64,000 bases of DNA, from assembly GCF_039654945.1 (NCBI RefSeq), contig NW_027361821.1, positions 21,576,001 to 21,640,000 of the forward strand, written 5' to 3'. Below, one piece after another: positions 2,528 to 59,747 of the stretch. The notes beneath the pieces were generated by a model. The model was not told the origin of the DNA. It worked only from the letters and a program-made list of their open reading frames with translations, and did not search any database. Source of the DNA: Dendrobates tinctorius (lineage: Eukaryota). Numbering within the stretch: the first letter of the stretch is position 1; each line of letters begins with the position of its first letter. The translations under genes were made by a program, and so were the position numbers.

Positions 2528-4597
2528 ATCTAATCCTATCCTGTGTGACACTGACTGCTGAGCTGTGTATCTAAACCGCTTGTGTGATACTGTCTGCTGA
2601 GCCATGTATCTAATCCTATCCTGTGTGATACTGTCTGCTGAGCCATGTATCTAATCCTATCATGTATGATACTGACTGCTGAGCCGTATATCTAATCCTC
2701 TCCTGTGTGATACTGACTGCTGAGTCGTGTATCTAATCCTATCCTGTGTGATACTGACTGCTGAGCCATGTATCTAATTCTATTCTGTGTGATACTGTCT
2801 GCTGATCCGTGTATCTAATCCTCTCCTGTGTGATACTGACTGCTGAGCCGTGTATCTAATCCTATCCTGTGTGATACTGTCTGCTGAGCCATGTATCTAA
2901 TCCTCTCCTCTGTGTTACTGACTGCTGAGCCGTGTATCTAATCCTCTCCTGGGTGATACTGTCTGCTGAGCCGTGTATCTAATCCTATCCTGTGTGATAG
3001 TGACTGCGGAGCCGTGTATCTAATCCTATCCTGTGTGATACACAGCTCACCAGACTGTATCTAATCCTCTCGTGTGATACTGACTGCTGAGCCGTGTATC
3101 TAATCCTATCCTGCGTGATACTGTCTGCTGAGCCGTGTATCTAATCCTCTCCTCTGTGTTACTGACTGCTGAGCCGTGTATCTAATCCTATCCTGTGTGA
3201 TGCTGTCTGCTGAGCCGTGTATCTAATACTATCCTGTGTGATACTGACTGCTGAGCCGTGTATCTAATCCTATCCTGTGTGATACTGTCTGCTGAGCCGT
3301 GTATCTAATCCTCTCCTGTGTGATACTGACTGCTGAGCCATGTATCTAATCCTATCCTGTATGATACAGTCTGCTGAGCTGTGTATCTAATCCTCTCTTG
3401 TGTGATACTGACTGCTGAGCCGTGTATCTAATCCTATCCTGTGTGATACTGTCTGCTGATCCGTTTATCTAATCCTATCCTGTGTGATACAGTCTGCTGA
3501 TCCGTGTATCTAATCCTATCCTGTGTGATACAGTCTGCTGAGCTGTGTATCTAATCCTCTCTTGTGTGATTCTGACTGCTGAGCCGTGTATGTAATCCTA
3601 TCCTGTGTGATACAGTCTGCTGATCCGTGTATCTAATCCTATCCTGTGTGATACTGAGAGCTGAGCTGTGTATCTAATCCTCTCCTGTGTGATACCGTCT
3701 GCTGAGCCGCATATCTAATCCTATCATGTGTGATACTGACTGCTGAGCCGTGTATCTAATCCTCTCCTGTGTGATACTGACACCTGAGCCGCGTATCTAA
3801 TCCTATCCTGTGTGCTACTGTCTGCTGAGCCGTGTATCTAATCCTATCCTGTGTGATACTGACTGCGGAGCCGTGTATGTAATCCTCTCCTGTGTGATAC
3901 TGACTGCTGAGCCGTGTATCTAATCCTATCCTGTGTGATGCTGACTGCTGAGCTGTGTATCTAATCCTTTCTTGTGTGATAGAATTAGATACACGGCTCA
4001 GCAGAAAGTATCACACAGGATAGGATTAGATACACAGCTCAGCAGACAGTAGCACACAGGAGAGGATTAGATACACGGCTCAGCAGTCAGTATCACTCAT
4101 GATAGGATTAGATACACGGATCAGCAGACTATCATGAGTGATACTGACTGCGGAGCCGTGTATCTAATCCTCTCCTGTGTGATACGGACTGCTGAGCCAT
4201 GTATCTAATCCTCTCCTGTGTGATACTGACTGCTGAGCTGTGTATCTAATCCTATCCTGTATGCTACTGTCTGCTGAGCTGTGTATCTAATCCTCTCTTG
4301 TGTGATACTTTCTGCTGAGCCATGCATCTAATCCTATCATGTGTGATAGTGACTGCTGAGCTGTGTATCTAATCCTATCATGTGTGGTACTGTATGCTGA
4401 GCTGTGTATCTAATCATATCCTGTGTGATACTTACTGCTGAGCCGTGTATCTAATCCTATCCTGTGAGATACTTACTGCTGAGCCCTGTAGCTAATCCTC
4501 TCCTGTGTGATACTGACTGCTGAGCCGTGTATCTAATCCTATCCTGTGTGATACTGACTGCTGAGCCGTGTATCTAATCCTATCCCGTGTGATACTG
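2528..4597 (+). repeat. 41-bp satellite, about 50 copies (consensus gagccgtgtatctaatcctatcctgtgtgatactgactgct), with an internal inverted block at about 3981-4128
   Basis: Directly visible period of 41 nt (e.g. gagcc at 2640 and 2681). Confidence 0.95.
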
Positions 4598-5000
4598 CTC
4601 TCCTGAAATACTCTGTGCTGCTGTCACCCTGCTGGTTTTATGTGCGATCTACATGGTGGTATTGTGTATGATCTATATGGCGGTATGATGTGTGAAGTAT
4701 ATGGCGGCATTATGTGTGAAATATATGGCGGTATTATGTGAGAACCCTATGGCAGTATTATCTGCTAAAAGGGGACCCATTCTAGGGTGGTTCTGGCTGA
4801 GCACCTGCACACGGGTCAGGGGTAATAGTTAGGTGCAGTCAGGGGAGGGCTGGTGAGGCAGCTGAAGAGAAGGGTCTCATTTTTATCGTTACTATATGGC
4901 TACATTTCCCCCAGCCTGCTTCCCAGCGTCACCCCGGACTGCACCTGTCGCCTCGCTTTCACACATCGCCAGGACGGGATCTGAGGAGGGGAATGGGGTT

Positions 5001-25340: not shown

Positions 25341-27322
25341 CCCAATTTTATCCAACATCTACAATACCATACAGTCACTTTATCCCTTGTGTTTGTTCAG
25401 ATATTATGTTACACCGTTCCTGAAGATGAGATCCGAGACGTCTTGATAATTGTTATGATGTTTACTGTCTATTTATCGGTAAGTATCGTAAATATAGATT
25501 CATTCTTTATGATTGCATTAAATAACGCTGGTATAAGACAACCGGATTACAGCTGAATTTTAGCATCTATATATTATAAACGCCTTAAACTCTGATGATC
25601 TAAGTTTAGTTCATGCAACTCTGAAAGAAACCTAACTCCCCCAATTAAGATTATGCAGGATTACTCATTCTCCTATAAAACAAAACAAAAAAAAAACAAA
25701 CAGTACATTGGGAAATGTTAAAGAGAACCTGACATCAAATCTAAGGCTACCAAACCACTTTTAGCATGCTACAAAAGTTCTTATCTACATGTTCTTCATG
25801 TTCAAATCATTTCTTATATAAAGAGGGAGAAATGGAAAGTATTAGGCTCCCTTCCCAAAGGTCATTTTCCTGGCAGAACTCCTGCAATTGAAATGTTCCA
25901 GAAGGTGAATACTTCTGTGATTATCGCAGCTAAAATCGTGCGCTAAACTACAATTTTTTGTGAAAGTTCCATTTAAGGCTACGGTCCCACGATGAGTTTT
26001 TTTTGTGAGTTTTTTACTCTTTATTTTAGAAAAAATGCAAGTAACCTATTTTACTTAATAGGTGCAGGAATGGTGCAGAAAATGTGCAACATCAAAAACT
26101 CTCCAAAAGCTCTTCATGTGAATGTAGTCTAAAAGTATCGTTTCACCAGAATAATCTAATGTGCAGAATTAAGAACCGCTCCCTCGGTGGCTCCCCGGCA
26201 TATCCGGGTGTTGTGTGGACAGTGACTCAGTGTTACATTACACCTGCAGAGGATGCGTAAGGGGAAATATGTGCCCACATGCCACTTCACCCATGGCTAA
26301 TCGCTGAGCACTGCACAGGCTTCTTTTTATGTGTTATTGTACATGACATTGTCCACCTTTGTCCTATGAAGAAGTGCACTGTATATACAAGTATTGACTC
26401 TTGCATAAGTAATTACCAATTAGAGGTACTGGTTTGAAAGTAAAAATATAACATAAATGCACAGTCCTGTATACAGTAGCACATGATGTCCGCGCTATTA
26501 TTTACGGTAAGTTTTTGATTCCTCTAGTTTATCTTATGCCTTTCCCCTTAGAAAACTTCTTTCGTTTCTCAGAAAAGCAAGGGGGGTGTACTGTGATACT
26601 GAGCTTGCCAGCAGTATACCCTTCTTACTTCCCTTCCCATATTTCCCATAGGACATTGCATTATATCAATGTAATTCAAAATTGTAGGAAAGCTGGGTTA
26701 CAGTGGTTGTTTCACAGCAAGCCCAGCATTGATCCAGCTTTCCCACTGCATAAAATAAAAAAGGAGGTGAAAAAGGGAAAATTGCACTGCTGAATTGCAA
26801 ATAAAAAAGGAGACAAGTTGAATAAAGGTGAAAACGGACATCGAGGTCTTGAGAAACAACCTTAAGGCGACCTGTCACCTTGGAAAATGCTATTTACCTG
26901 TTGATAAAGGGTTAATAAACTGCAGTTAAATAGCTTTAAAAGGCTGTTAGCAGGCTTGGACTGGCCCACCGGAGAACCGGAGGATTCTCCGGAGGGCCCA
27001 GGCACTGACACCTGCTGGCATACTGGCCAGCAGCTGCCTAGGGCCCCCACTGCTCCAAGAGCCCTCACTGCTCCAGGGACTCCCAGCCAGAGGCTATGGG
27101 GCCCCTGAGTCAAGGGGGCCCACCCTGTGCCAGCGTAGCAGCAGCTGGAGACAGGATCCTGTCCTGGCTGCTAAAGCGAAATGAATATTCACGCTTCCCC
27201 ACGCCCCAATGGGCATGGAGAGGCGTGAATACCATTTCTCTTTAATAGTGGGCAGCGTTAGTCGCAGGCTGCAGCTAACACTGCCTGCATGTTAAGCCCC
27301 ACCACCGCACCACACACATACA

Positions 27323-28367
27323 TGTGGCGCCCCCAGGAGTATGGTCGCCACAGTGGCATTACCTTCCTCCTAGGGAGTGTGATATCATGCTTGGAAGCAA
27401 TGAAGGGTCTATCTGTCAGTTAATCACAACACACAACACAGTTCTCATTCCAGGCCAGCAGAGGGAGCTCTGAACCAAAACAGGGGGAAGAGCTACTCTC
27501 TGGGGGCCAGGAAGGGAAAATTAGGAGTTCGTGTGAGGAGGGCAATGTGTGTGGACGTGAGGAGAGGAGCTGGAAGATTGAGCAGAGTTCAGAGCTGACT
27601 TCTAGCTATAGCGCATGATCTGGAGCCCGGTCTCCAAGGTTGTATGGATACTGATGTTCCTGCAACAGAAACCGGAGGAATACGAAGCTGTAAATGCTCT
27701 GTTCCCACATAAGACTCGGAGGCACAACAGCAACGGGTGAGCCAGAAGAAGAAGAAGGCTACAGCTGTCTGCCATACGAGGGAGTTCTAAATGAGAGCAA
27801 GCAAGTGGAACTTCAGTGTAACACAGTACTGCAAGTACCTAAAATAAGCGCTAGAAAGGAGACTGCACAACCCATCTGATAGAGAGATTCCTAAGTTGCT
27901 TCCAGGCCAGCCAGCCTCTGTTCCATCTGTAATCTGGAATTCTGGACTGCATTTACCAAGCAAAGTAAAGGTAAAAGAAACTGCACCCTGTTGTGTCCTT
28001 GCCTCCTTCCTGCAAACTCTCCAGCACTGCTACATCTCTGTGCCAGACACTACCCCCTCTTCCTCAACACCTATCCTCTTCATCTACTCTGCCCTGGGAT
28101 TGCAGCCCTGCCTGTGGAGGGTTACAACATCATTGCTGCACCACACCATCTGTTCCAGAGAATCTGCTTGCAGCGTCGGCTTAACATCTTCATTGCCGAG
28201 CACCACAGGTGGCGTCACGTATCATCCACTTATAAACTTTAACCAGCCACACTTAACCTCTTTTACATGGACGCCCAGGGCCACGGACCGGGTCACCGCT
28301 ACTGTGACACTTCCCTCTGAGTTACCGGCCCGGTACCGAGTACCCCACGGCCCTGGCGGGCGATCCA
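27323..28367 (+). repeat. 5' LTR
   Basis: Direct repeat of 35042-36088; about 32 differences by hand count (about 3%). Confidence 0.95.
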
Positions 28368-28370
28368 TTT

Positions 28371-28388
28371 TGGCGTCACGAACAGGAT
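28371..28388 (+). promoter_or_regulatory. Primer binding site complementary to the 3' end of tRNA-Ser(CGA)
   Basis: TGGCGTCACGAACAGGAT is the reverse complement of ATCCTGTTCGTGACG+CCA, the recalled 3' end of a vertebrate tRNA-Ser(CGA); it lies 3 nt after the LTR. Confidence 0.85.
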
Positions 28389-34200: not shown

Positions 34201-35041
34201 CCTCATCAGCAGTATCGAGGGATCATCTGAAATTGTGCCCTGACCAACTAAAGGACAGAATGGAAGAGCAAAACAACCTTCAGCCCATAGAGGAAGAAGA
34301 AGAAAAGGTCAGCACTATACTCGGAGAATTCCCTGCAAATTGGACTAGACCGAATCAAGCCATAGAGGTGCCAGTTTTGACCTTTCCCCAACTGGTAGTG
34401 CAAGATGAAGTGACTCAAGACCACTCTGAAAACCAGCAAGTACAAGCAGCGGATGCCACACCAGCAGTGGAAGAAGAGAATTCTCACCCTGCCAGTGGTG
34501 AATCTGTCATGCCCACAGTGAGTAGAAGTGGTCCTAGGAAATCTAGTATTCCTGTGCTATGCAGAACCAACAGTAATGTAGCCAGTACAACACACACTAC
34601 ACCAGTAGTTAACACCAGGCATCCAATAAGGTCCCCAACAACACCAGTGCTACGTAGGTCTGCCCGTAGTAGCCAAGTTATACCGCCCATAAGGTTTCGT
34701 ATATAAATATCTAATGTAAATGTTAAAATGTAAATATGCAACCTTTTTAAGCTTATATGACTACAGAGACTCTGTAAGAACCCTTTTGGAAATATCAGTT
34801 TGTTTTTGATGGACAATTGGGCCACAGGACTATGTGTGGTCAAAACTATCTTGTATATGGTTACCAACTGCTCAGGAAATGGACATTGACGCATGGACTA
34901 ATCGTCATCAGGACTATTTTTGATCTTTGGCTTTTGTAATTTTTCATTTTTGAAATCTTGTTACAGTTATAATTGTTCAATTGTTTATATGTTTTACTTG
35001 TTTTCTTCAGTCCGGGAGTACTGAATTGCACTAGGGGGGAA

Positions 35042-36088
35042 TGTGGCGCCCCCAGGAGTATGGTCGCCACAGTGGCATTACCTTCCTCCTAGGGAATATG
35101 ATGTCATTCTTGGAAGCAATGAAGGGTCTCTCTGTCAGTTAATTACAACACACAACACAGTTCTCATTCCACGCCAGCAAAGGGAGCTCTGAACCAAAAC
35201 TGGGGGAAGAGCTACTCTCTGGGGGCCAGGAAGGGAAAATTAGGAGTTCGTGTGAGGAGGGCAACGTGTGTGGACTTGAGGAGAGGAGCTGGAAGATTGA
35301 GCAGAGTTCAGAGCTCACTTCTAGCTATAGCGCATGATCTGGAGCCCGGTCTCCAATGTTGTATGGATATATGGATGTTCCTGCAACAGAAAACGGAGGA
35401 ATACGAAGCTGTAAATGCTCTGTTCCCACATAAGACTCGGAAGTACAACAGCAATGGGTGAGCCAGAAGAAGAAGAAGGCTACAGCTGTCTGCCATACGA
35501 GGGAGTTCTAAATGAGAACAAGCAAGTGGAACTTCAGTGTAACACAGTACTGCAAGTACCTAAAATAAGCGGTAGAAAGGAGACTACACAACCCATCTGA
35601 TGGAGAGATTCCTAAGTTGCTTCCAGGCCAGCCAGCCTCTGTTCCATCTGTAATCTGGAATTCTGGACTGCATTTACCAAGCAAAGTAAAGGTAAAAGAA
35701 ACTGCACCCTGTTGTGTCCTTGCCTCCTTCCTGCAAACTCTCCAGCACTGCTACATCTCTGTGCCAGACACTACACCCTCTTCCTCAACACCTATCCTCT
35801 TCATCTACCCTGCCCTGGGATTGCAGCCCTGCCTGTGGAGGGTTACAACATCATTGCTGCACCACACCATCTGTTCCAGAGAATCTGCTTGCAGCGTCGG
35901 CTTAACATCTTCATTGCCAAGCACCACAGGTGGCGTCACGTATCATCCACTTATAAACTTTAACCAGCCACGCTTAACCCCTTTTACATGGATGCCCAGG
36001 GCCACGGACCGGGTCACCGCTACTGTGACACTTCCCTCTGAGATACCGGCCCGGTACCAAGTACCCCACGGACCTGGCGGGCGATCCA
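35042..36088 (+). repeat. 3' LTR
   Basis: Follows PPT AGGGGGGAA; direct repeat of 27323-28367. Confidence 0.95.
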
Positions 36089-36359
36089 CATACACACGCA
36101 GGCACACAGACACACAGCACAGCACATTCCGGCATCCTGCTTCCTGCCCAGAGCTTCCTGTCTGAGACAGCCCTGTTGGATGATGTCATCATCCAGCGCG
36201 CTGTCTCAGACAGAAAGCTGCCAGTGAGGAAGAGACTGCCGGGATATGCTGCTGCTGCGGGGAGGTGAACTGTGCTGTTTGTCTGTGTGTGTATGTGGTG
36301 CGGTCCTTTGTGAGTGTGAGAGAGTGATGTGGTGCTTTGTGTGTGTGTGTGAGAGAGAG

Positions 36360-36820
36360 GGGTGGTGGGGAAAGACAATGATATTGTGGGGGAGGCACTG
36401 ATGGAGGTGATAGACAATGATGGTGGTGGGGGAGGCAATTATGGAGGTGATGGCAATGATGGTGGTGATGGACAATGATGCTGGGGGGAGGGAATGATGG
36501 AGGTGATGGGCAATGATGGTGGGGGAGGCAATGATGGAGGTGATGGGCAATGATGGTGGGGGGAGGCAATTATGGAGGTGATGGGCAATGATGGTGGGGA
36601 GAGGCAATGATGGAGGTGATGGGAGGCAATAATGGAGGTGATGGGCAATGATGGCAGTGGGGGAGGCAATGATGGAGGTGATGATGGAGGTGATGAAATG
36701 GACAATGATGGTGGTGGGAAAGGAGGCAATGATTGAGATGGTGAAATGGGCAATGATGGGGGTGGTGGGGGAGAATGGTAGGGATGGTGAGGGAGAAGGC
36801 AATGATGGAGGTGGTGATGA
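36360..36820 (+). repeat. GAT/GGT-rich minisatellite (ggcaatgatggaggtgatg-like units)
   Basis: Visible low-complexity repeat; explains the Pro/His/Ile-rich spurious ORFs. Confidence 0.9.
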
Positions 36821-38770: not shown

Positions 38771-39872
38771 ATCAATTGGATTAGTCTCCACTGCCAGACC
38801 GCTCTGACCAATATGCAATCGCTCCTGATGAACCCGCAGTAGGGGGAAACGCGTTGAGAGTGTGCGGACTATATCTGAGGAATGATGTTATCATGGACCT
38901 TATGGCTATCATTATGAAGGAGTATCCATTTGCTTAGAATATCTTCATGAATGCGGTAAAACAGATTTATACAATCATGTATGGATGTGAGGAAAGGTAG
39001 AAAGTCCAGACAGTCTGAATAAACGCATAACACTCACATACAATAGAACCAGTTACATATAAATTAGTAGCAATTTATGCCCTTTTCCCAAAACCACCAT
39101 GTTATGTATATGAAGTATATATAAATTGTCACAGCAAGTACCCAGATAAAGAACTGCCCATTAAACACAATGATAAATCAATAGTAGGTAAACAAAAAAA
39201 AGGCTTATCTGCTATCAAATTGTCACAGATAAGTACTGTCTTTTTGCATGTATGGGCTTATTGTTGTCAGTATCTGGTGATTCAAACTAGGGGTATAGTA
39301 TATATCTGATATCTGCAGTGGCTGTAGTACCCCTGCTAATTTACACTGAGGCTTGTAAATCTGGCATATTCAGTGGTGTCTTTGATTGTTTCTAGGATTT
39401 CTGACAATTCTCGTTTTTCTTAGGGTACCAACCTCCGCACCTAGGTAGGTGTTCAGACAGTCATTTTGTATAGGGCCAGGTCACTCTTTTCTTCACATCG
39501 TCTGAGTGAAATTGTTATTAGATGGTAGCACGTATTATCAAATTTTATATATTCTCTTTATGTCCATTTGCCTTTTTTCCATTTTTTGAGGTTTTTGGGC
39601 TAGAATAGTATTTTGCAGTTTTTAACTGCTTGGATTCAGATTTTTCTGACCATATGATTGTATTGGCAGATCCAGCTGGTTAGATTTGGTTTAACTGTTA
39701 TACCTTATCTCTTTCCAGCATTGTAATAGCCCGTTTTTTACTAGGCTTTAAAATAAGGGACATCTGTGCAATTTTATATTGTCATTTTTGTACTTAATAA
39801 AAGTTATATTTTAATAGGGTTTTTTCAGTTAGTCGGTTATAGGTAACCCTTTTTCACATTATATTTGTAAGT
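38771..39872 (+). mobile_element. Non-coding Penelope-like/retrozyme-like insertion in the Gypsy protease region
   Basis: 11-bp TSD GAGAGTGGAAC (38760-38770 and 39873-39883); hammerhead motif near the 5' end; AATAAA and a T-rich tail near the 3' end; no long internal ORF. Confidence 0.75.
38820..38862 (+). ncRNA. Minimal type I hammerhead ribozyme motif (possibly degenerate)
   Basis: ctc-CTGATGA(38825-38831)-aCCCgcagtaGGGg-GAAA-CGCGTT-gag: both core boxes, stem II, palindromic stem III (AACGCGTT), GUU cleavage triplet, short stem I ctc/gag. Confidence 0.7.
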
Positions 39873-42145: not shown

Positions 42146-44106
42146 AACATTTATATGGGGGACCTAGCCACTAGTTATATCATACTAGAATTGTATAGTT
42201 TAACTCAATATTTTATCACAAATCAACTTTTGATAATTAAATGAGGGCGCTTCAGTGCTCCCTTGGCATGGCCTTGGACTTGATGCACCGTTAAGCCCTT
42301 CTATTTGCATAATAAAGCAGGTACCTTATAGTGATTGACATGTCTCTGAACCCGAGAGTGAATGTTGTGTCATATCATTTCATGTGTCTGTGGCTGTGCA
42401 CCCATACTGGATGAGCTCTGATGCCAAGCTCCTGCATGTCTGTGGCCACCACTTCCTGGACTCGGAAGTGTAGGGAGCAAGCAGCTTCTGTGAGGAGGAG
42501 AAGGTGTTCTGACACATAGCTGCTGTCTGTGTGGCGCCCTGCATCTTTACTGCCACAAAAGGGTTAAATATGTACTGTTTTGTATGTGTTTTGTGAGCAA
42601 TGGAAGTTATGCTTTCTCTGCTAGAGACCACAACACACACACAATTTGCCTCACTTGTCTGAAGCTGCGAGCTTTGCAGACATACCCTAACTGGGAGGGG
42701 CCGAGTGGTTGTTTCAGTGAACAAGAAGGAGGAAGAACGTATTGGAGGCCATGTTAAGACATGTGCTTGATCCAGGAGTGAGAGCTAAGAAGCATCAGCG
42801 TGTCAGTCCCTAGACCATCCATGCTTTTTTAATTTATTTTCATTAGGGTATATACACATTGTTTTTTCCTTTGGTTTTGCTTGTTTTTATGGCCAGTGTG
42901 AACATGCTCTTACATCATGCATGTCATTCAAGTCTACTCCAGTTCAGTTTTTTGTGTTTCTTTAGAATTTTTGTATTCAGTACAAATAGGGTGTGGCCTC
43001 CTTTCTACTGAGCTGTGTAGTTCATTTATAGTCCCTCTAAGCTGGGTGTCCGTTTGAGACCCAGAGACTCTGCCACTATTCACACTAGGTAGGTTTTACC
43101 GTTAGTGTAGTTATTGTCTCAAATGGGTACACCTTGCCGTGGTGGGACAGCTTTACACTTTTTTGATCAAAATAGTGTTTACCAAGTACCCTATGTTATT
43201 TAATGCACTTGCTTTTTTACTTATTTATTTTCATTAGGGTATATACACACTGTTTTTTCCTTTGGTTTTGCTTGCTTTTATGACCAGTGTGAACATGCTT
43301 TTACATCATGCATGTCATTCAAGTCTACTCCAGTTCAGTTTTTTGTATTTCTTGAGATTTACAAAACGGACATACTCCGTGAATGGAAGACTTATGATTG
43401 TTAATGAAAACAAGGGTGGTGTAAACATTTATATGGGGGACCTAGCCCCTATAGTTATATCATACTAGAAGTGTATAGTTTAACTCAATATTTTATCACA
43501 AATCAATTTTTGATATTTAAATGAGGGCGCCTCAGTGCTCCCTTGGCATGGCCTAGGACTTGATGCACCATTAAGCCCTCCTATTTGCATCATAAAGCAG
43601 GTACCTTATAGTGATTGACATGTCTCTGAACCCGAGAGTGAATGTTGTGTCATATCATTTCATGTGTCTGTGGCTGTGCACCCATACTGGATGAGTTCTG
43701 ATGCCAAGCTCCTGCAAGTCTGTGGCCACCACTCCCTGGACTCGGAAGTGTAGGGAGCAAGCAGCTTCAGTGAGGAGGAGAAGGTGTTCTGACACATGGC
43801 TGCTGTCTGTGTGGCGCCCTGCATCTTTACTGCCACAAAAGGGTTAAATATGTACTGTTTTGTATGTGTTTTGTGAGCAATGGGAGTTATGCTTTCTCTG
43901 CTAGAGACCACAACACACACACAATTTGCCTCACTTGTCTGAAGCTGAGAGCTTTGCAGACATACCCTAACTGGGAGGGGCCGAGTGGTTGTTTCAGAGA
44001 ACAAGAAGGAGGAAGAACGTATTGGAGGCCATGTTAAGACATGTGCTTGATCCAGGAGTGAGAGCTAAGAAGCATTAGGGTGTCAGTCCCTAGACCATCC
44101 ATGCTT
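42078..44106. repeat. Local duplication with 1280-bp offset (about 750-bp block duplicated around a 530-bp insert)
   Basis: Near-identical ORFs at 42380-42724 and 43660-44004; about 135-bp direct repeats at about 42827-42962 and 43222-43353. Confidence 0.9.
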
Positions 44107-44788
44107 TCAGAGCAGGGTGGTAAGCTGAGAGACTTCGTGGGATTATACAACCAGCAGAAAAGTGTTTTCCCTCAGAAAAAACTGCAACAATCTAGGATCA
44201 GTGACGGTAGTGCAAGTGGGAACTTGAGCTGCTTCACAAAGGATTCAAGCTGCAAGTTGCTGAAGGCAAAATACACAGTGAGTAGAGGCAATACTGGGAA
44301 GTTCTAAACTCTGAGAAGCCTTGGTCCCAGAAGGGATTAGAATAGCAGGAAGTTACACTGAGTCACAGCAGGGAAATATAACTCCCATTCTCCAGAGCAG
44401 ACTGTAACCTGGTGAGAGTTGTAATATCTCCTCTGAACTGCACCTGAACTACAGTAAATGATAAAGTGACTTTTCTTGTCTCCTGCCTTATTACTCCGTG
44501 CCTTCTACTTGCATCACAATCTCTGGGGGTCTGCCCTGGTTGGAGAGGGTTTAACATCTGCACTGCCATCACCATCTACTCCCCCAGGGATCATCTGCAG
44601 TGCCCGCTATACTTCAGTCGAACACTCCATCTGGCGTCACGAATCACTACATAAACTTTATCCCCATTCAATTCAACCCCTTTTAAATGACTGCCTGGGG
44701 CCATGGACCGGGTCACCGCCACTGTGACATCTCCCATTGAAGTTAACGGGCTCGGTACCGAGTATCCCACGGCCCCTCGGGCGCGTCA
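43810..44788 (+). mobile_element. Solo Gypsy LTR inserted in a Kolobok-type MITE whose right end is at about 45155
   Basis: TGTGGCGCCC...GGGCGCGTCA with 4-bp TSD TCTG; a partial duplicate starts at 42530. Confidence 0.9.
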
Positions 44789-55545: not shown

Positions 55546-56619
55546 TGGAGCGCCCGCCATGGGCATGGGGATACTCGGTACCGGGCTGGTTCTTAAGGGG
55601 ATGTGTCACGGCAGCAGTGACCCAGTCCGTGGCCCTGGGCGTCCAATGAAAATGATGATAAAAGGGGAATAAAGTTTATAAGATATAGTTCGTGACGCCA
55701 CCTTCGGTATTCAGCAAGGGATAGCTGATGCTGCTTAAAGAGACCGCTGGGGCTGATGGTGATGCAGCAGAGTTGGTACAGCTCTCCACAGGTAGAGCTA
55801 AGTCCCAGGGCACTTATGATGTTAAAGATAGTGGTGATGGTAGTAGTGCAGAGGGGATGGTACAGTAAATAACTCTGAGGACACAGCAGGGTGCAGTCTT
55901 CATACTTTTACTCACAGTTTGTGGTGCAGTCCAGAGCACTGATTACAGATGGTAATGGAGATCCGGGCAGCCTGGAAGCAATTTGGGATCCGCCTAACCA
56001 GATGGAGTTGGAGACCTCCTTACTGCGCTGTCCTCTGAGGTCCTTGCTGCCTGAAACTACGCTCAGTCCTCTGTTCCTTTCTGTCCTTTAGTCCTTGCCT
56101 GTATGAGAAGCAGCTTGAGCCTTTTACAGGTGTCACTCCTTTGTGGTGGCTCTGGCATGCTGCTGTGCCTTCAGGTGTGTGATGTGGCCAGTTGGCCAGC
56201 AGTCTCCTACCCTCTGAATTTTACTGCTGGGACTGTTGTACCCGTGCAGCCACCATGGACTCCGGCGTCTGGTGTCAAGTGCTCTACACCCTGGGGTGAG
56301 CTTGGTCACAGCTCCAATTCCCAGGCTTTCCTAAACTTCCACTTTCCTTTCTCTTAACTCTGCTCTTGGAACGAGCTCCTCACAGCGCCTTTCCCCTGTA
56401 CAGACTCTTACAGACTGGCCAACCCCGCCTCCAGGCCAGAACTAATATGGAAGATTTCCTGAGACCAGGTTTTGAGCTCCCCCTTCTGGTCTGGAGTCAG
56501 GAAAGGTGTTGTATACTGGTGTTACCTGACTAGGGAAACCCTCGTTGCTTCCAGGCATGACATCACCCCCTGTGAGGGAGGAAATGTCATTGTGGCAACC
56601 GGAATCCTGGGGAGCAACA
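55546..56619 (-). mobile_element. Solo Gypsy LTR (reverse orientation)
   Basis: Minus strand TGTTGCTCCCC...GGGCGCTCCA with 4-bp TSD AAAT (55542-55545 and 56620-56623). Confidence 0.9.
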
Positions 56620-58370
56620 AAATGATGACAGGATATGATATGAGGGGACTATCAATCCCTAGTACTCCCTATAGGAGACCCTACATACATGCGGAGGTTG
56701 ACACACTAAATTGTACAATATGGTGCCCCCCACTTCATGACGGCTATCACATAAAACCCTGTTACACACCTTATCAAAATGTGCCGCACAGGTTTTTCTT
56801 GAGAGTTTTTTTTGTGAGTTCTTAACTTAATTATTAAAGGTTATATTTTAGGGGTCTATTTTTTTCTGATTTTGTAACCTTTTCTGTTCGACCATGGCTG
56901 AGTTCGACTGATCAAAGCAAGGTCCATAAAGACATGGTTAGGTGCATCCAGTGTGGAAGAACTTCCCTGTAATTCACAGAGCCCTGATTTCAACTCTATG
57001 AACTAGAATAAAAATTGTGAACCATGCCCTTTTGTCCAACATCAGTGTTTGACCTCACAGACGCAACACAACAAATGTTTTAGTAAGTCTTGAAGATTTG
57101 AATCTGTTATCAGTACTGAGGGGGGACCACCTCCTTATTAATGCCTATTGATTAGTGATGGGCGATCCTATGGATGTTCAAAGTCTGGCTGATCATTTTA
57201 AAAAAGTTTGATTACCAGAACAGTAACCGAACTCAGATTCCATTCAGATGAATGGGGGGCCCGAACATCCACTGTTTGCCATGCTGTCATCTGCTTGATA
57301 ATGCAGCAAACACGGGCTCTGATCGATGCCGGCCAGAGAGCTGCAGTTTTCACACTGTTAGATGACAGCATGTGAGCCAGTTGTGACCTGCGGTTAAAAG
57401 GTTACCGCTGGTCATATGCGTTGGCTGATGAGAGTACTACTCTCATCATCCTATACATGCTCTCGCTGATACAACGAGAGCAGGCAAGGCTGATTTTATT
57501 TGTATTTATTTATTTTACTCATTTATAGAGTTGAGCGACTTTTGGTTTTTTAGGGTCGCGTTTCGTTTCGTGAAACCCGACTTTTCCAAAAGTCGGGTCG
57601 AGCAAGATCGTCCGATTATAGGGAAAAGTCGGGGTCGTCCCGAAACACGAAACCCAATGTAATTCAATGGGGAATAAAAGTCGGCAGTGAGAGGAGGACA
57701 GGAAACACACCTACAGTGCCCATTTGAATGCCAAAAGCATCAATTCTTCATACTTAAGCTTGTCAACCTTAATTAACTTCATAATACAAGTTACGCACTG
57801 AAAAATGGGGGTTATTTGGCTAAAGTTGTGGGGGGGGAGGGCTGGCTGCAGGTTTTCATGTGCCCTGGGCGAAAGAGCGCCCCTTTAACACATACCACAA
57901 CTCATCATGCTCCGATACGGCAGATAAATAGCGGTATAGTACAAAGAAAAATACCTCACTTTTTACATCTCATGACGAGGCCCATCTATTTCTCCATACA
58001 GAATCATTGGTCCCATATAATGTTTGAAACAGTATATGATGAGCTCCACATAATGCTACAGTATATGTTGGTCCCCATGGATGAAGCTCCACTGTCTTAT
58101 GGGCCCAAATAATGCTCCAAACATAATGGGCCCCATTTCTAATGCTCTAGTGTATAATGGGCCCTGTAAATGCTGCTCCAGTGTCTGATGTCCACCTTTG
58201 GAATGTTCCAGTGTATGGTGGGCCCCATCTATCATTCTCCAGAGTATAGTGCTCCCCAAAAATTGCTGTCCCAACATTGAAAACAATCAAATAAGTCTCC
58301 TCGCTAGGGAATCCCTGTACTTGTCTGGACAGGTGCTCTAGCTTGCTTAACAGCTCGCCAGCCGTTCTCA

Positions 58371-59747
58371 CGCCCAGTATGGATTGCACGTGATTGCACA
58401 AAGGTTAGAAAGGGTACCGTATCCCTGGATAACATGTATGGATAGCGTACACATTCAAAATATATGTCTCAGGAGGCAGGCTCAGACGGTGTCAGGCACA
58501 GTATGGATTGCACGTGATTGCACAAAGGTTAGAAAGGGTACCGTATCCCCGGATAACATGTATGGATAGCGTACACATTCAAAATATATGTCTCAGGAGG
58601 CAGGCTCAGACGGTGTTAGGCCCAGTGTGGATTGCACGTGATTGCACAAAGGTTAGAAAGGGTACCGTATCCCTGGATAACATGTATGGATAGCGTACAC
58701 ATTCAAAATATATGTCTCAGGAGGCAGGCTCAGACGGTGTCAGGCCCAGTATGGATTGCACGTGATTGCACAAAGGTTAGAAAGGGTACCGTATCCCTGG
58801 ATAACATGTATGGATAGCGTACACATTCAAAATATATGTCTCAGGAGGCAGGCTCAGACGGTGTCAGGCACAGTATGGATTGCACGTGTTTGCACAAAGG
58901 TTAGAAAGGGTACCGTATCCCCGGATAACATGTATGGATAGCGTACACATTCAAAATATATGTCTCAGGAGGCAGGCTCAGACGGTGTTAGGCCCAGTAT
59001 GGATTGCACGTGATTGCACAAAGGTTAGAAAGGGTACCGTATCCCTGGATAACATGTATGGATAGTGTACACATTCAAAATATATGTCTCAGGAGGCAGG
59101 CTCAGACGGTGTCAGGCACAGTATGGATTGCACGTGATTGCAAAGGTTATAAAGGGTACCGTATCCCCGGATAACATGTATGGATAGCGTACACATTCAA
59201 AATATATGTCTCAGGAGGAAGGCTCAGATGGTGTTAGGCCCAGTATGGATTGCACGTGATTGCACAAAGGTTAGAAAGGGTACCGTATCCCTGGATAACA
59301 TGTATGGATAGCGTACACATTCAAAATATATGTCTCAGGAGGCAGGCTCAGACGGTGTCAGGCACAGTATGGATTGCATGTGATTGCACAAAGGTTAGAA
59401 AGGGTACCGTATCCCTGGATAACATGTATGGATAGCGTACACATTCAAAATATATGTCTCAGGAGGCAGGCTCAGACGGTGTTAGGCCCAGTATGGATTG
59501 CACGTGATTGCACAAAGGTTAGAAAGGGTACCGTATCCCTGGATAACATGTATGGATAGCGTACACATTCAAAATATATGTCTCAGGAGGCAGGCTCAGA
59601 CGGTGTCAGGCCCAGTATGGATTGCACGTGATTGCACAAAGGTTAGAAAGGGTACCGTATCCCTGGATAACATGTATGGATAGCGTACACATTCAAAATA
59701 TATGTCTCAGGAGGCAGGCTCAAACGGTGTCAGGCACAGTATGGATT
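58371..59747. repeat. 124-bp tandem repeat, 11 copies, downstream of the hAT ORF
   Basis: Period 124 nt (repeated ORF starts at 58384, 58508, 58632...); units nearly identical, no spacers. Confidence 0.97.

What the first reader, a model, noticed from the sequence alone, without database searches (positions are those of the whole stretch)
28210..28388. LTR-internal extra PBS / tRNA-Ser(CGA) end-mimic cassette shared by three different LTR types
Seen: about 160 nt upstream of the real PBS (TGGCGTCACGAACAGGAT, 28371), the LTR carries a second TGGCGTCACG (28210). About 96-99 nt from its start comes a GTCACcgcYactGTGAC motif. The same arrangement is in the 3' LTR (35931-36029) and in two solo LTRs with dissimilar U3 regions (44632-44728; 55605-55700 on the opposite strand). 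Read antisense, the best copy (55605-55700) starts GTCACGG and ends GTTCGTGACGCCA. These match the recalled 5' and 3' ends plus CCA of tRNA-Ser(CGA) and form the same 7-bp acceptor stem. Known: bipartite or extended tRNA contacts exist in Ty3 and Ty1. Inference: this is a conserved priming-control module. It could be a second tRNA docking site, a cis switch masking the PBS, a decoy for 3' tRNA fragments, or an antisense tRNA-like self-primer. I know of no description of it for this clade but could not check.
Basis: partly seen in the sequence, partly recalled or inferred. Interest (0 to 1): 0.75.

Follow-up and report, generated by a model that had tools for sequence, protein, structure and literature searches.

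The report
Second tRNA-Ser primer site inside LTR
A frog Ty3/gypsy retrotransposon carries, inside its long terminal repeat, a short second copy of its tRNA-Ser primer-binding site that has stayed unchanged across distant frogs and changed together with the real site when one lineage switched primer tRNA, so it looks like a working second tRNA contact rather than a dead relic.

Summary
All four LTR copies in the window carry an exact TGGCGTCACG 161 nt upstream of the true PBS position. The PBS is an 18-nt complement of tRNA-Ser(CGA). All four copies also carry a GTCAC..GTGAC motif.

New evidence:
- The internal PBS copy (i-PBS, 10-13 nt) is also present in related elements of Dendrobates, Phyllobates, Bufo and Rana, which form one RT clade. 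A separate one occurs in a fish element.
- Each i-PBS has p<=0.0005 against shuffled LTRs.
- Between genera the flanks are randomised, but the 10-mer is invariant.
- In Phyllobates, nested inside the Ser(CGA) clade, the PBS has switched to the tRNA-Ser(AGA/TGA) type. The i-PBS at the orthologous LTR position switched with it.
- The i-PBS lies in U5, at the distance from the AGTAAA poly(A)-like signal where relatives have their only PBS. It is preceded by an LTR-terminus-like ACA.

I read it as the ancestral PBS, kept inside an extended U5 as a primer-matched, weaker tRNA-3'-end annealing site.

The "tRNA 5'-end mimic / antisense tRNA" half of the finding is not supported. It is confined to dendrobatids, is not statistically tRNA-like, and sits inside a conserved U5 stem-loop.

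The scan noted a similar thing before on other DNA of this genome: a Gmr1-like LTR with tRNA-Leu motifs.

The parts
27323..28367 (+). 5' LTR (TG...CA) of a broken Ty3/gypsy element
   Evidence: Self-BLAST pair 27322-28367 / 35041-36088, 96.8% identity. Internal ORF pieces hit protease, RVT_1, RNase H and integrase in that order.
27964..27969 (+). AGTAAA poly(A)-like signal followed by a GT-rich stretch; it marks the likely R/U5 border about 20-30 nt downstream (inferred)
   Evidence: The same hexamer with a T/GT-rich tail is present in all frog LTRs of the clade and in relatives. No RNA data were available.
28205..28209 (+). ACA plus a 2-nt spacer directly upstream of the internal PBS copy; looks like a former LTR terminus
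   Evidence: ACA or CA plus 1-4 nt precedes the i-PBS in window, Dendrobates, Bufo, Rana, Phyllobates and the fish. True LTR ends of relatives are ..ACA plus 3-4 nt.
28210..28219 (+). i-PBS: internal copy of PBS positions 1-10 (complement of tRNA-Ser NCCA end plus acceptor 3' strand)
   Evidence: A prefix copy of at least 10 nt occurred in 1 of 2000 dinucleotide shuffles of the LTR. Predicted duplex with the tRNA 3' end is -18.6 kcal/mol, against -33.9 for the PBS.
28274..28357 (+). Conserved U5 stem-loop of the dendrobatid families; it contains the GTCAC(28292-28296)..GTGAC(28304-28308) motif
   Evidence: RNAalifold on 7 copies gives 18 pairs. The outer stem is CCAGGGCC/GGCCCTGG, with one pair seen as AU, UA and GC. 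The inner stem is GGACCGGGTC/GRCCCGGT.CC. The local hairpin is not part of the consensus.
28368..28370 (+). TTT spacer between the LTR end and the PBS
28371..28388 (+). True PBS, 18 nt complementary to the 3' end of tRNA-Ser(CGA)
   Evidence: 17 nt are the complement of tRF-Ser-CGA-013, TCCTGTTCGTGACGCCA (PMC9659620).
35033..35041 (+). Polypurine tract (AGGGGGGAA) abutting the 3' LTR
35042..36088 (+). 3' LTR, with i-PBS at 35931-35940 and the hairpin motif at 36013-36029
   Evidence: The apparent target duplication CATACA lies at 27317-27322 and 36089-36094.
43810..44788 (+). Solo LTR of a second type, with i-PBS at 44632-44643 (12 nt) and the hairpin motif at 44712-44728
   Evidence: TSD is TCTG on both sides.
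55546..56619 (-). Solo LTR of a third type, with i-PBS at 55688-55700 (13 nt) and the hairpin motif at 55605-55621
   Evidence: TSD is ATTT on both sides.

Best explanation
The LTR-internal TGGCGTCACG is the kept 5' part of an older primer-binding site.

Origin:
- In an ancestor the LTR ended at the ACA just upstream of it, and the tRNA primed there.
- Priming later moved to a second PBS 60-170 nt downstream, so the old site and the stretch behind it became part of U5 and are now copied into both LTRs.
- The old site did not decay. Its first 10-13 nt are held identical to the working PBS. These are the complement of the tRNA's NCCA end and the 3' strand of the acceptor stem.

Most likely function:
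- It acts in the genomic RNA as a second, weaker annealing site for the 3' end of the same tRNA-Ser.
- It could be a landing site that captures the primer and passes it to the full 18-nt PBS nearby.
- It could also be an occasional alternative start site for minus-strand DNA.

What is shown and what is inferred:
- Shown: its presence, conservation, position and co-switch with the PBS.
- Inferred: its U5 location, its ancestral-PBS origin, and tRNA binding as the selected function.

The GTCAC..GTGAC motif is a separate, dendrobatid-specific part of a conserved U5 stem-loop.
For: 1. The i-PBS is present in 6 lineages, each with p<=0.0005 against LTR shuffles.
2. The frog carriers form one RT clade, (Rana,(Bufo,(Phyllobates,(window,Dendrobates)))), with 93/97 support, which mirrors host relationships.
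3. Across genera the 10-mer is 10/10 identical, while 45-60 nt flanks align at 0.5-0.6, about background.
4. Phyllobates is nested in the Ser(CGA) clade but has the PBS TGGCGTAGTCGGCAGGAT. This matches human tRNA-Ser-AGA/TGA in PMC10359600.
5. The Phyllobates i-PBS at the orthologous LTR position is TGGCGTAGTCGG. Six adjacent bases changed, while both flanks stay homologous.
6. The distance from the AGTAAA/AATAAA signal to the PBS is 92-151 nt in four relatives without an i-PBS. The distance from the signal to the i-PBS is 87-115 nt in Bufo, Rana and the fish.
7. ACA or CA plus a 1-4 nt spacer precedes the i-PBS, as at true LTR ends.
8. The Rana and Bufo i-PBS retain 14 of 15-18 PBS positions, as a decayed full site would.
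9. Match length is always 10-13 nt, which is the NCCA end plus the acceptor strand. Predicted duplexes with the tRNA end are -18.6 to -24.8 kcal/mol.
10. Extended tRNA contacts do occur in this clade. The Rana leader has a 19/21 complement of the tRNA-Ser D arm 8 nt after the PBS.
Against: - There are no RNA data. All runs that hold the stretch are genomic contigs, so R/U5 borders and expression are inferred from motifs only.
- No binding or priming experiment exists.
- The match never reaches 18 nt, although regular use as a start site should restore it.
- No short-LTR copy (LTR ending at the ACA) was seen, but only about 12 copies were in reach.
- Within dendrobatids other U5 blocks are as invariant as the i-PBS.
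- Only one clear co-switch was sampled (Phyllobates), plus one independent fish case.
- Four relatives with Ser PBSs lack any internal copy. So do several apparent Ser(CGA)-primed elements on metagenome contigs. It is therefore not required for Ser-primed replication.
Confidence: 0.5

Rival explanations
1. Non-functional by-product. The internal copy is a fossil of an LTR-end/PBS junction. It is kept similar to the PBS by reverse-transcription errors, such as template switching or patch conversion between the two repeats 60-170 nt apart, or repeated re-creation of the junction. Selection plays no part.
For: - It has a fossil-junction anatomy, with ACA plus spacer and the canonical distance from the poly(A) signal.
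- The conversion tract in Phyllobates is short, with flanks kept.
- An earlier scan note (s1-382839) reports rows of decayed junction copies in a Gmr1-like LTR of this genome.
- Relatives do well without an i-PBS.
Against: - A repeat of 10-13 nt is a poor substrate for frequent conversion, and the expected outcome of switching between direct repeats is deletion of the spacer.
- The motif is invariant in Rana, Bufo and dendrobatids while everything around it is randomised.
- The stretch between i-PBS and PBS is not a duplicate of the older U5 or of the leader.
Confidence: 0.2
2. A cis RNA switch. The internal copy competes with the PBS for a short anti-PBS segment in U5 (CYGTGAC in dendrobatids, CCTGTTC in Bufo). 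This masks or frees the PBS, and the tRNA never binds the internal copy.
For: - GUCACG of the i-PBS or the PBS can pair with YGUGAC (6 bp).
- In Phyllobates a GACTAC that pairs with GTAGTC of its own sites lies within a few nt of the orthologous place.
- In the Bufo fold the PBS pairs with CCTGTTCC.
Against: - No common partner is seen across species in predicted folds.
- The folds are no more stable than shuffles (z -0.9 and +0.3).
- The RNAalifold consensus uses the GGGTC of the motif in another stem.
- GACTAC in Phyllobates is one insertion away from GACAC, and a 6-mer complement in 150 nt is expected about 0.25 times by chance.
- Rana and the fish show no such third element.
Confidence: 0.12
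3. An antisense tRNA-like RNA, self-primer or decoy for 3' tRNA fragments. The roughly 97-nt module read antisense would be a tRNA-Ser mimic with acceptor stem and CCA end.
For: In one solo LTR the antisense strand starts GTCACGG and ends GTTCGTGACGCCA.
Against: - There is no tRNA hit on either strand with ARAGORN, or with Rfam at E<=10, even when only 131 nt were searched.
- In the other copies pair 6 of the proposed acceptor stem is A-C.
- Likeness to the tRNA 5' end is not above shuffles.
- The distal motif is missing in Bufo, Rana and the fish.
- A decoy for 3' tRFs would lack their seed-paired part (PBS positions 11-18).
Confidence: 0.03
4. A promoter element. CGTCA is a CRE half-site and GTCACGTGAC in Rana is an E-box palindrome, lying upstream of a TATA-like TATAAA, so the likeness to the PBS would be a coincidence.
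For: An A/T-rich motif (TATAAA, TTAAAT, TTAATA) follows the site within 5-25 nt in frogs.
Against: - The motif changed to TGGCGTAGTCGG exactly when the PBS did, which no transcription-factor site would do.
- The conserved part includes the TGG that matters only for the CCA end.
- A conserved AGTAAA signal lies 87-246 nt upstream, which puts the site in U5.
Confidence: 0.03

Closest known systems
Bipartite or extended primer-binding sites of yeast Ty3 and Ty1 (Gabus 1998; Friant 1996; review PMC5371799)
   Same: The genomic RNA contacts the primer tRNA at more than one place, and the extra contacts lie in U5 (Ty1) or far away (Ty3). The Rana relative has such a contact, a 19/21 complement of the D arm after the PBS.
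   Different: In the yeast elements the extra segments pair with other parts of the tRNA (T and D arms), so one tRNA binds all of them at once. Here the extra site repeats the part of the PBS that pairs with the 3' end. It therefore competes with the PBS for the same nucleotides, or binds a second tRNA molecule.
Primer activation signal (PAS) in HIV-1 U5 (Beerens and Berkhout 2002, cited in PMC5371799)
   Same: A short U5 motif upstream of the PBS that is tied to the primer tRNA and would be expected to co-vary with primer identity.
   Different: PAS pairs with the T-arm (anti-PAS) and is not a copy of the PBS. That description rests on my own knowledge plus the citation.
Retroviral vectors engineered with two PBSs, which show dual initiation (Voronin and Pathak, 2003-2004; recalled from memory, not found in the held library)
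   Same: Two sites complementary to the same tRNA 3' end on one genome can both be occupied and used.
   Different: Those are artificial 18-nt duplicates. Here the arrangement is natural, ancient, truncated to 10-13 nt and inside the LTR.
Helenus / TRIMp3 elements with tRNA-derived sequence in the LTR (Kojima 2024, PMC10886601)
   Same: tRNA-related sequence inside an LTR.
   Different: Helenus are non-autonomous TRIMs with a sense-oriented, recognisable tRNA-like pol III promoter that is unrelated to their primer tRNA. Here an autonomous gypsy element carries only a PBS fragment matching its own primer, and no tRNA-like fold.
Tf1/sushi-type self-priming
   Same: A short LTR-region sequence related to the PBS.
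   Different: In Tf1 the first 11 nt of the transcript are complementary to the PBS and fold back on it. Here the motif is identical to the PBS, not complementary, and the PBS is a perfect 18-nt tRNA match.
tRNA-Leu PBS-like motifs in a Gmr1-like LTR of the same genome (scan notes s1-382839, s1-377260; unchecked AI notes)
   Same: PBS-like motifs of the element's own primer inside U5, some with an LTR-terminus motif, and one conserved across distant frogs.
   Different: It is a different superfamily branch and a different tRNA. A row of decayed copies was reported there, whereas here there is a single kept copy. I could not read that DNA.

Membership tests
Ty3/gypsy LTR retrotransposon (the host element) | Pol domain order protease - RT - RNase H - integrase | tested here: met
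   Pfam hits on successive ORF pieces between 30642 and 33867. The ORFs are broken.
Ty3/gypsy LTR retrotransposon (the host element) | Direct LTRs with TG..CA ends, a PBS after the 5' LTR, a PPT before the 3' LTR, and a target duplication | tested here: met
Bipartite/extended PBS of Ty1/Ty3 type | The extra genomic segment is complementary to a tRNA region other than the 3' terminal 8-18 nt (T or D arm) | tested here: not met
   The i-PBS equals PBS positions 1-10/13. A D-arm complement was found only in the Rana leader.
HIV-type primer activation signal | A U5 motif complementary to the T-arm of the primer | tested here: not met
   The motif is complementary to the NCCA end and the acceptor 3' strand.
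Tf1-type self-primer | An LTR/R sequence complementary to the PBS | tested here: not met
   The motif is identical to the PBS in sense.
tRNA gene, tRNA-like structure or tRNA-derived SINE/Helenus head | Cloverleaf sequence and structure detectable by tRNA models on one strand | tested here: not met
   ARAGORN found none. Rfam found no tRNA at E<=10 in 30 kb or in the 131-nt module.
Functional primer-binding site (as start site of minus-strand DNA) | Lies directly after the U5 end, so that LTR copies end just upstream of it | tested here: inconclusive
   An ACA terminus-like motif precedes it. No LTR copy ending there was found among the roughly 12 copies in reach.
Functional primer-binding site (as start site of minus-strand DNA) | tRNA binding and priming shown biochemically | not testable with these tools
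   Only predicted duplex energies are available.

The most novel reading that the evidence does not exclude
These elements run a two-site system. Minus-strand DNA can start at either the old site (i-PBS) or the downstream PBS, so a family toggles between short-U5 and long-U5 LTR forms. Because plus-strand DNA copies the tRNA at whichever site was used, a change of primer tRNA is written into both sites. This would be a built-in route for stepwise LTR growth and for primer switching. It would also explain the PBS-like fossils seen in other frog LTR families.
Probability: 0.2. Interest if true: 0.8.

Novelty: new variant of a known kind. Interest (0 to 1): 0.62.

Why it matters
How LTR retrotransposons choose, place and change their tRNA primer is known in detail for only a few yeast elements and retroviruses. 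In those, every extra contact uses a different part of the tRNA.

Here there is a natural second copy of the 3'-end binding site inside U5. It has been conserved since ranid and hyloid frogs diverged, and it was rewritten together with the PBS at a primer switch. That gives a clean comparative handle on primer placement and primer switching, and on how U5 grows.

It also matters for annotation. LTR finders that look for the first tRNA-complementary site can misplace the LTR end by about 160 nt in these families.

Tried and rejected
- tRNA models on the module (ARAGORN, and Rfam at E<=10 on 30 kb and on 131 nt) gave nothing.
- Public reads gave no RNA evidence. The 24 runs found are all kept as Logan contigs. 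The four I laid behave like low-coverage genomic DNA, so no transcript start or end could be read. No joint 28219->28381 appears among those listed.
- I tested whether the stretch between i-PBS and PBS is a tandem copy of the older U5 or of the leader. It was not significant, with best p about 0.01-0.02 in two of six elements.
- I tested whether an A/T-rich motif after the i-PBS is a D-arm complement. Only the Rana leader is significant.
- I tested the distal motif against the complement of the tRNA 5' 20 nt. It was not above shuffles, and the wrong tRNA type scored about as well.
- I looked for a second PBS downstream of the PBS in relatives without an i-PBS and found none.
- Single-sequence folds of the U5 region are no more stable than shuffles, and no partner of the i-PBS is shared between species.
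- Exact-pattern scans for the 18-nt PBS gave 1 hit in viral contigs (bacterial-looking coding DNA) and 29 in metagenome contigs, about the chance number. A few have an ..ACA-NN-PBS look, and none has an upstream copy. I took none of these contigs for human and did nothing further with them.
- Literature searches for a described LTR-internal PBS copy found nothing relevant in the held library. This does not prove that none exists.
- One look-up (P0022) returned no DNA. L008-L010 gave no usable LTR/PBS of this clade.
Broken ORFs were searched piece by piece, and stops were read as X in the RT tree.

Full report
**What is there**

The window holds a degraded Ty3/gypsy element.
- Its LTRs are 27323-28367 and 35042-36088, 96.8% identical.
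- A purine tract abuts the 3' LTR.
- ORF pieces hit protease, RT, RNase H and integrase in that order.
- Three nt after the 5' LTR lies TGGCGTCACGAACAGGAT.

The PBS identifies the primer tRNA.
- Its complement ends in TCCTGTTCGTGACGCCA, published as a 3' fragment of tRNA-Ser-CGA (PMC9659620).
- The matching 5' end, GTCACGGTGGCCGAGTGGTT, is published as a mouse Ser-CGA 5' fragment (PMC11551137).

- TGGCGTCACG is at 28210, 35931, 44632 and 55700(-), plus the PBS. With one mismatch allowed this is 7 hits against 1.2 expected.
- GGTCACYGCYRCYGTGAC is at four places against none expected.
- The two outlying copies are solo LTRs with 4-bp target duplications, 43810-44788 and 55546-56619 on the minus strand.
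- Upstream of the module the three LTR types hardly align.

**Relatives**

The RT-bearing ORF finds its best relatives in dendrobatid frogs (88% and 76% identity). Next come Bufo, Rana and Pristimantis, and then fishes. I fetched the DNA around nine such genes.

An LTR-internal copy of the first 10-13 nt of the element's own PBS (i-PBS) occurs in these elements:

| Element | i-PBS match | Distance upstream of the PBS |
|---|---|---|
| Dendrobates tinctorius (three LTRs) | 13 nt | 168 nt (measured in the one copy that has a PBS) |
| Bufo gargarizans | 13 nt | 142 nt |
| Rana temporaria | 10 nt | 157 nt |
| Phyllobates terribilis | 12 nt | 165 nt |
| Rhinichthys (fish) | 10 nt | 62 nt |

- In 2000 dinucleotide shuffles of each LTR, a copy this long appeared 0 or 1 times.
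- Four other relatives have Ser-type PBSs and no internal copy: Pristimantis, a second Bufo element, Alosa and Pungitius.

**The key result**

On an RT tree the frog carriers form one clade, (Rana,(Bufo,(Phyllobates,(window,Dendrobates)))). Support is 93/97 for the clade and 99/99 for the dendrobatid part.
- All members use the Ser(CGA)-type PBS except Phyllobates.
- The Phyllobates PBS is TGGCGTAGTCGGCAGGAT. This is the exact complement of the 3' end of human tRNA-Ser-AGA/TGA as printed in PMC10359600.
- The Phyllobates LTR aligns with the window's on both sides of the internal motif. At the orthologous place it reads TGGCGTAGTCGG (TGGCGTAGTCGC in the 3' LTR).
- So six adjacent bases changed in the internal copy exactly as in the PBS, while the flanks stayed. 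An A/T-rich motif right after position 13 is shared with Bufo.

This rules out a transcription-factor site and chance. It means the internal copy is tied to the primer tRNA, or to the PBS itself. Between genera the 10-mer is 10/10 identical, while 45-60-nt flanks align at 0.5-0.6, about what unrelated sequence gives with gaps.

**Where it sits**

No RNA evidence could be had. All holders of the stretch are contigs that behave as genomic DNA. The position has to be read from sequence alone.
- Every LTR of the group has a conserved AGTAAA (AATAAA in fishes) followed by a T/GT-rich stretch.
- In the four elements without an internal copy, this signal lies 92-151 nt before the PBS.
- In Bufo, Rana and the fish it lies 87-115 nt before the internal copy and 160-272 nt before the PBS.
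- In dendrobatids the distances are 209-246 nt and 377-407 nt.
- The internal copy is preceded by ACA (or CA) plus 1-4 nt. True LTR ends in the group are ..ACA/..CA plus 3-10 nt before the PBS.
- The Rana and Bufo copies keep 14 of the first 15-18 PBS positions.

I infer that the internal copy is the ancestral PBS with its former LTR end. I also infer that U5 was lengthened when priming moved to a downstream PBS. The added stretch is not a recognisable duplicate of the older U5 or of the leader.

**The distal motif**

GTCAC..GTGAC is confined to dendrobatid LTRs.
- RNAalifold on seven copies puts GGGTC of the motif into a longer conserved stem-loop, 28274-28357. One outer pair is seen as AU, UA and GC.
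- In Phyllobates a GACTAC that could pair with its own GTAGTC lies almost at the same place. It is one insertion away from GACAC, and a 6-mer of this kind is expected about 0.25 times in 150 nt.
- Local alignment of the stretch to the complement of the tRNA 5' 20 nt is not above shuffles, and the wrong tRNA type scores about as well.
- tRNA models find nothing on either strand.
- Bufo, Rana and the fish have the PBS copy without this motif.

The "tRNA end-mimic cassette" and the antisense tRNA reading are therefore not supported.

**How it most likely works**

The conserved part is exactly the complement of NCCA plus the 3' strand of the acceptor stem.
- Predicted duplexes with the tRNA end are -18.6 to -24.8 kcal/mol, against -34 to -36 for the PBS.
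- My best reading (0.5) is a second, weaker annealing site for the same tRNA-Ser in U5.
- It could capture the primer and hand it to the full PBS nearby. It could also be used now and then as a start site, which would let the tRNA re-template it and so explain the co-switch.

Points against this reading:
- The match never grows to 18 nt.
- No short-LTR form was seen in the few copies available.
- Other U5 blocks are equally invariant within dendrobatids.
- Relatives manage without it.

Rivals:
- A non-functional fossil kept similar to the PBS by reverse-transcription template switching (0.2).
- A cis switch with an anti-PBS segment (0.12).
- An antisense tRNA-like RNA or a decoy (0.03).
- A promoter element (0.03).

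**Comparison with what is known**

- Ty1 and Ty3 have bipartite PBSs, and HIV-1 has a primer activation signal. Those extra contacts pair with other arms of the tRNA (PMC5371799).
- The Rana relative has such a contact, a 19/21 complement of the D arm 8 nt after the PBS.
- Tf1 self-priming needs complementarity to the PBS, not identity with it.
- Helenus TRIMs carry sense tRNA-like pol III promoters unrelated to their primer (PMC10886601).
- Engineered two-PBS retroviral vectors, recalled from memory, show that two identical sites can both be used.
- I found no description of a natural, conserved, primer-matched PBS copy inside U5 in the held library.
- Earlier notes of this scan report tRNA-Leu PBS-like motifs in a Gmr1-like LTR of the same genome. 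This suggests the phenomenon is wider in frog LTR elements. I could not check that DNA.

**Verdict**

- I class it as a new variant of a known kind (extended primer-genome contacts).
- Interest is 0.62.

Noticed in passing
L004:7432-7452 (Rana temporaria relative): Eight nt after the PBS the leader reads ACGCCTTAACCATTCAGCCAC. This is a 19/21 complement of tRNA-Ser positions 7-27 (the D arm), an extended primer contact of the Ty1/Ty3 kind. It was not found in the other elements.
   Followed up: partly
L003:7439-7448, L004:7398-7405, L007:14907-14912; window 28368-28370: The spacer between the LTR's terminal CA and the PBS is unusually long and variable in this group (3 to 10 nt, often T-rich). 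The usual spacer is 2-3 nt. Either more bases are trimmed at the U5 end or the priming geometry is odd.
   Followed up: partly
L001:8403-8660 (Dendrobates tinctorius): An LTR with an intact internal PBS copy runs straight into leader sequence. The true PBS and about 45 nt of leader are missing, so this copy has lost its working primer site.
   Followed up: no
L003:7333-7340 (Bufo relative): CCTGTTCC lies 26 nt after the internal copy. It is a perfect 7-nt complement of PBS positions 10-16 and pairs with the PBS in the predicted fold, so it is a possible lineage-specific PBS-masking segment.
   Followed up: partly
window 27323-27340, 35042-35059, 43810-43822: The LTRs begin TGTGGCGCC.., a TGGCG-type motif at the U3 start right after the polypurine tract. 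I did not test whether this is more than chance.
   Followed up: no
window 36360-36816: A G-rich minisatellite (units near GGAGGCAATGATGGAGGTGATG, spacing 19-76 nt) starts about 270 nt after the 3' LTR.
   Followed up: no
window 2528-4606 and 58359-59747: Self-BLAST shows two long tandem arrays, with periods of about 41 nt and about 124 nt.
   Followed up: no
window 27317-27322 and 36089-36094: The full element is flanked by CATACA on both sides, inside a CA-rich stretch. The two solo LTRs have 4-bp duplications. The 6-bp match may be partly due to the repeat context.
   Followed up: no
window 38771-39872: Another first-stage note (s1-369682) flags a 1.1-kb insertion with a hammerhead motif here. 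I did not look at it.
   Followed up: no
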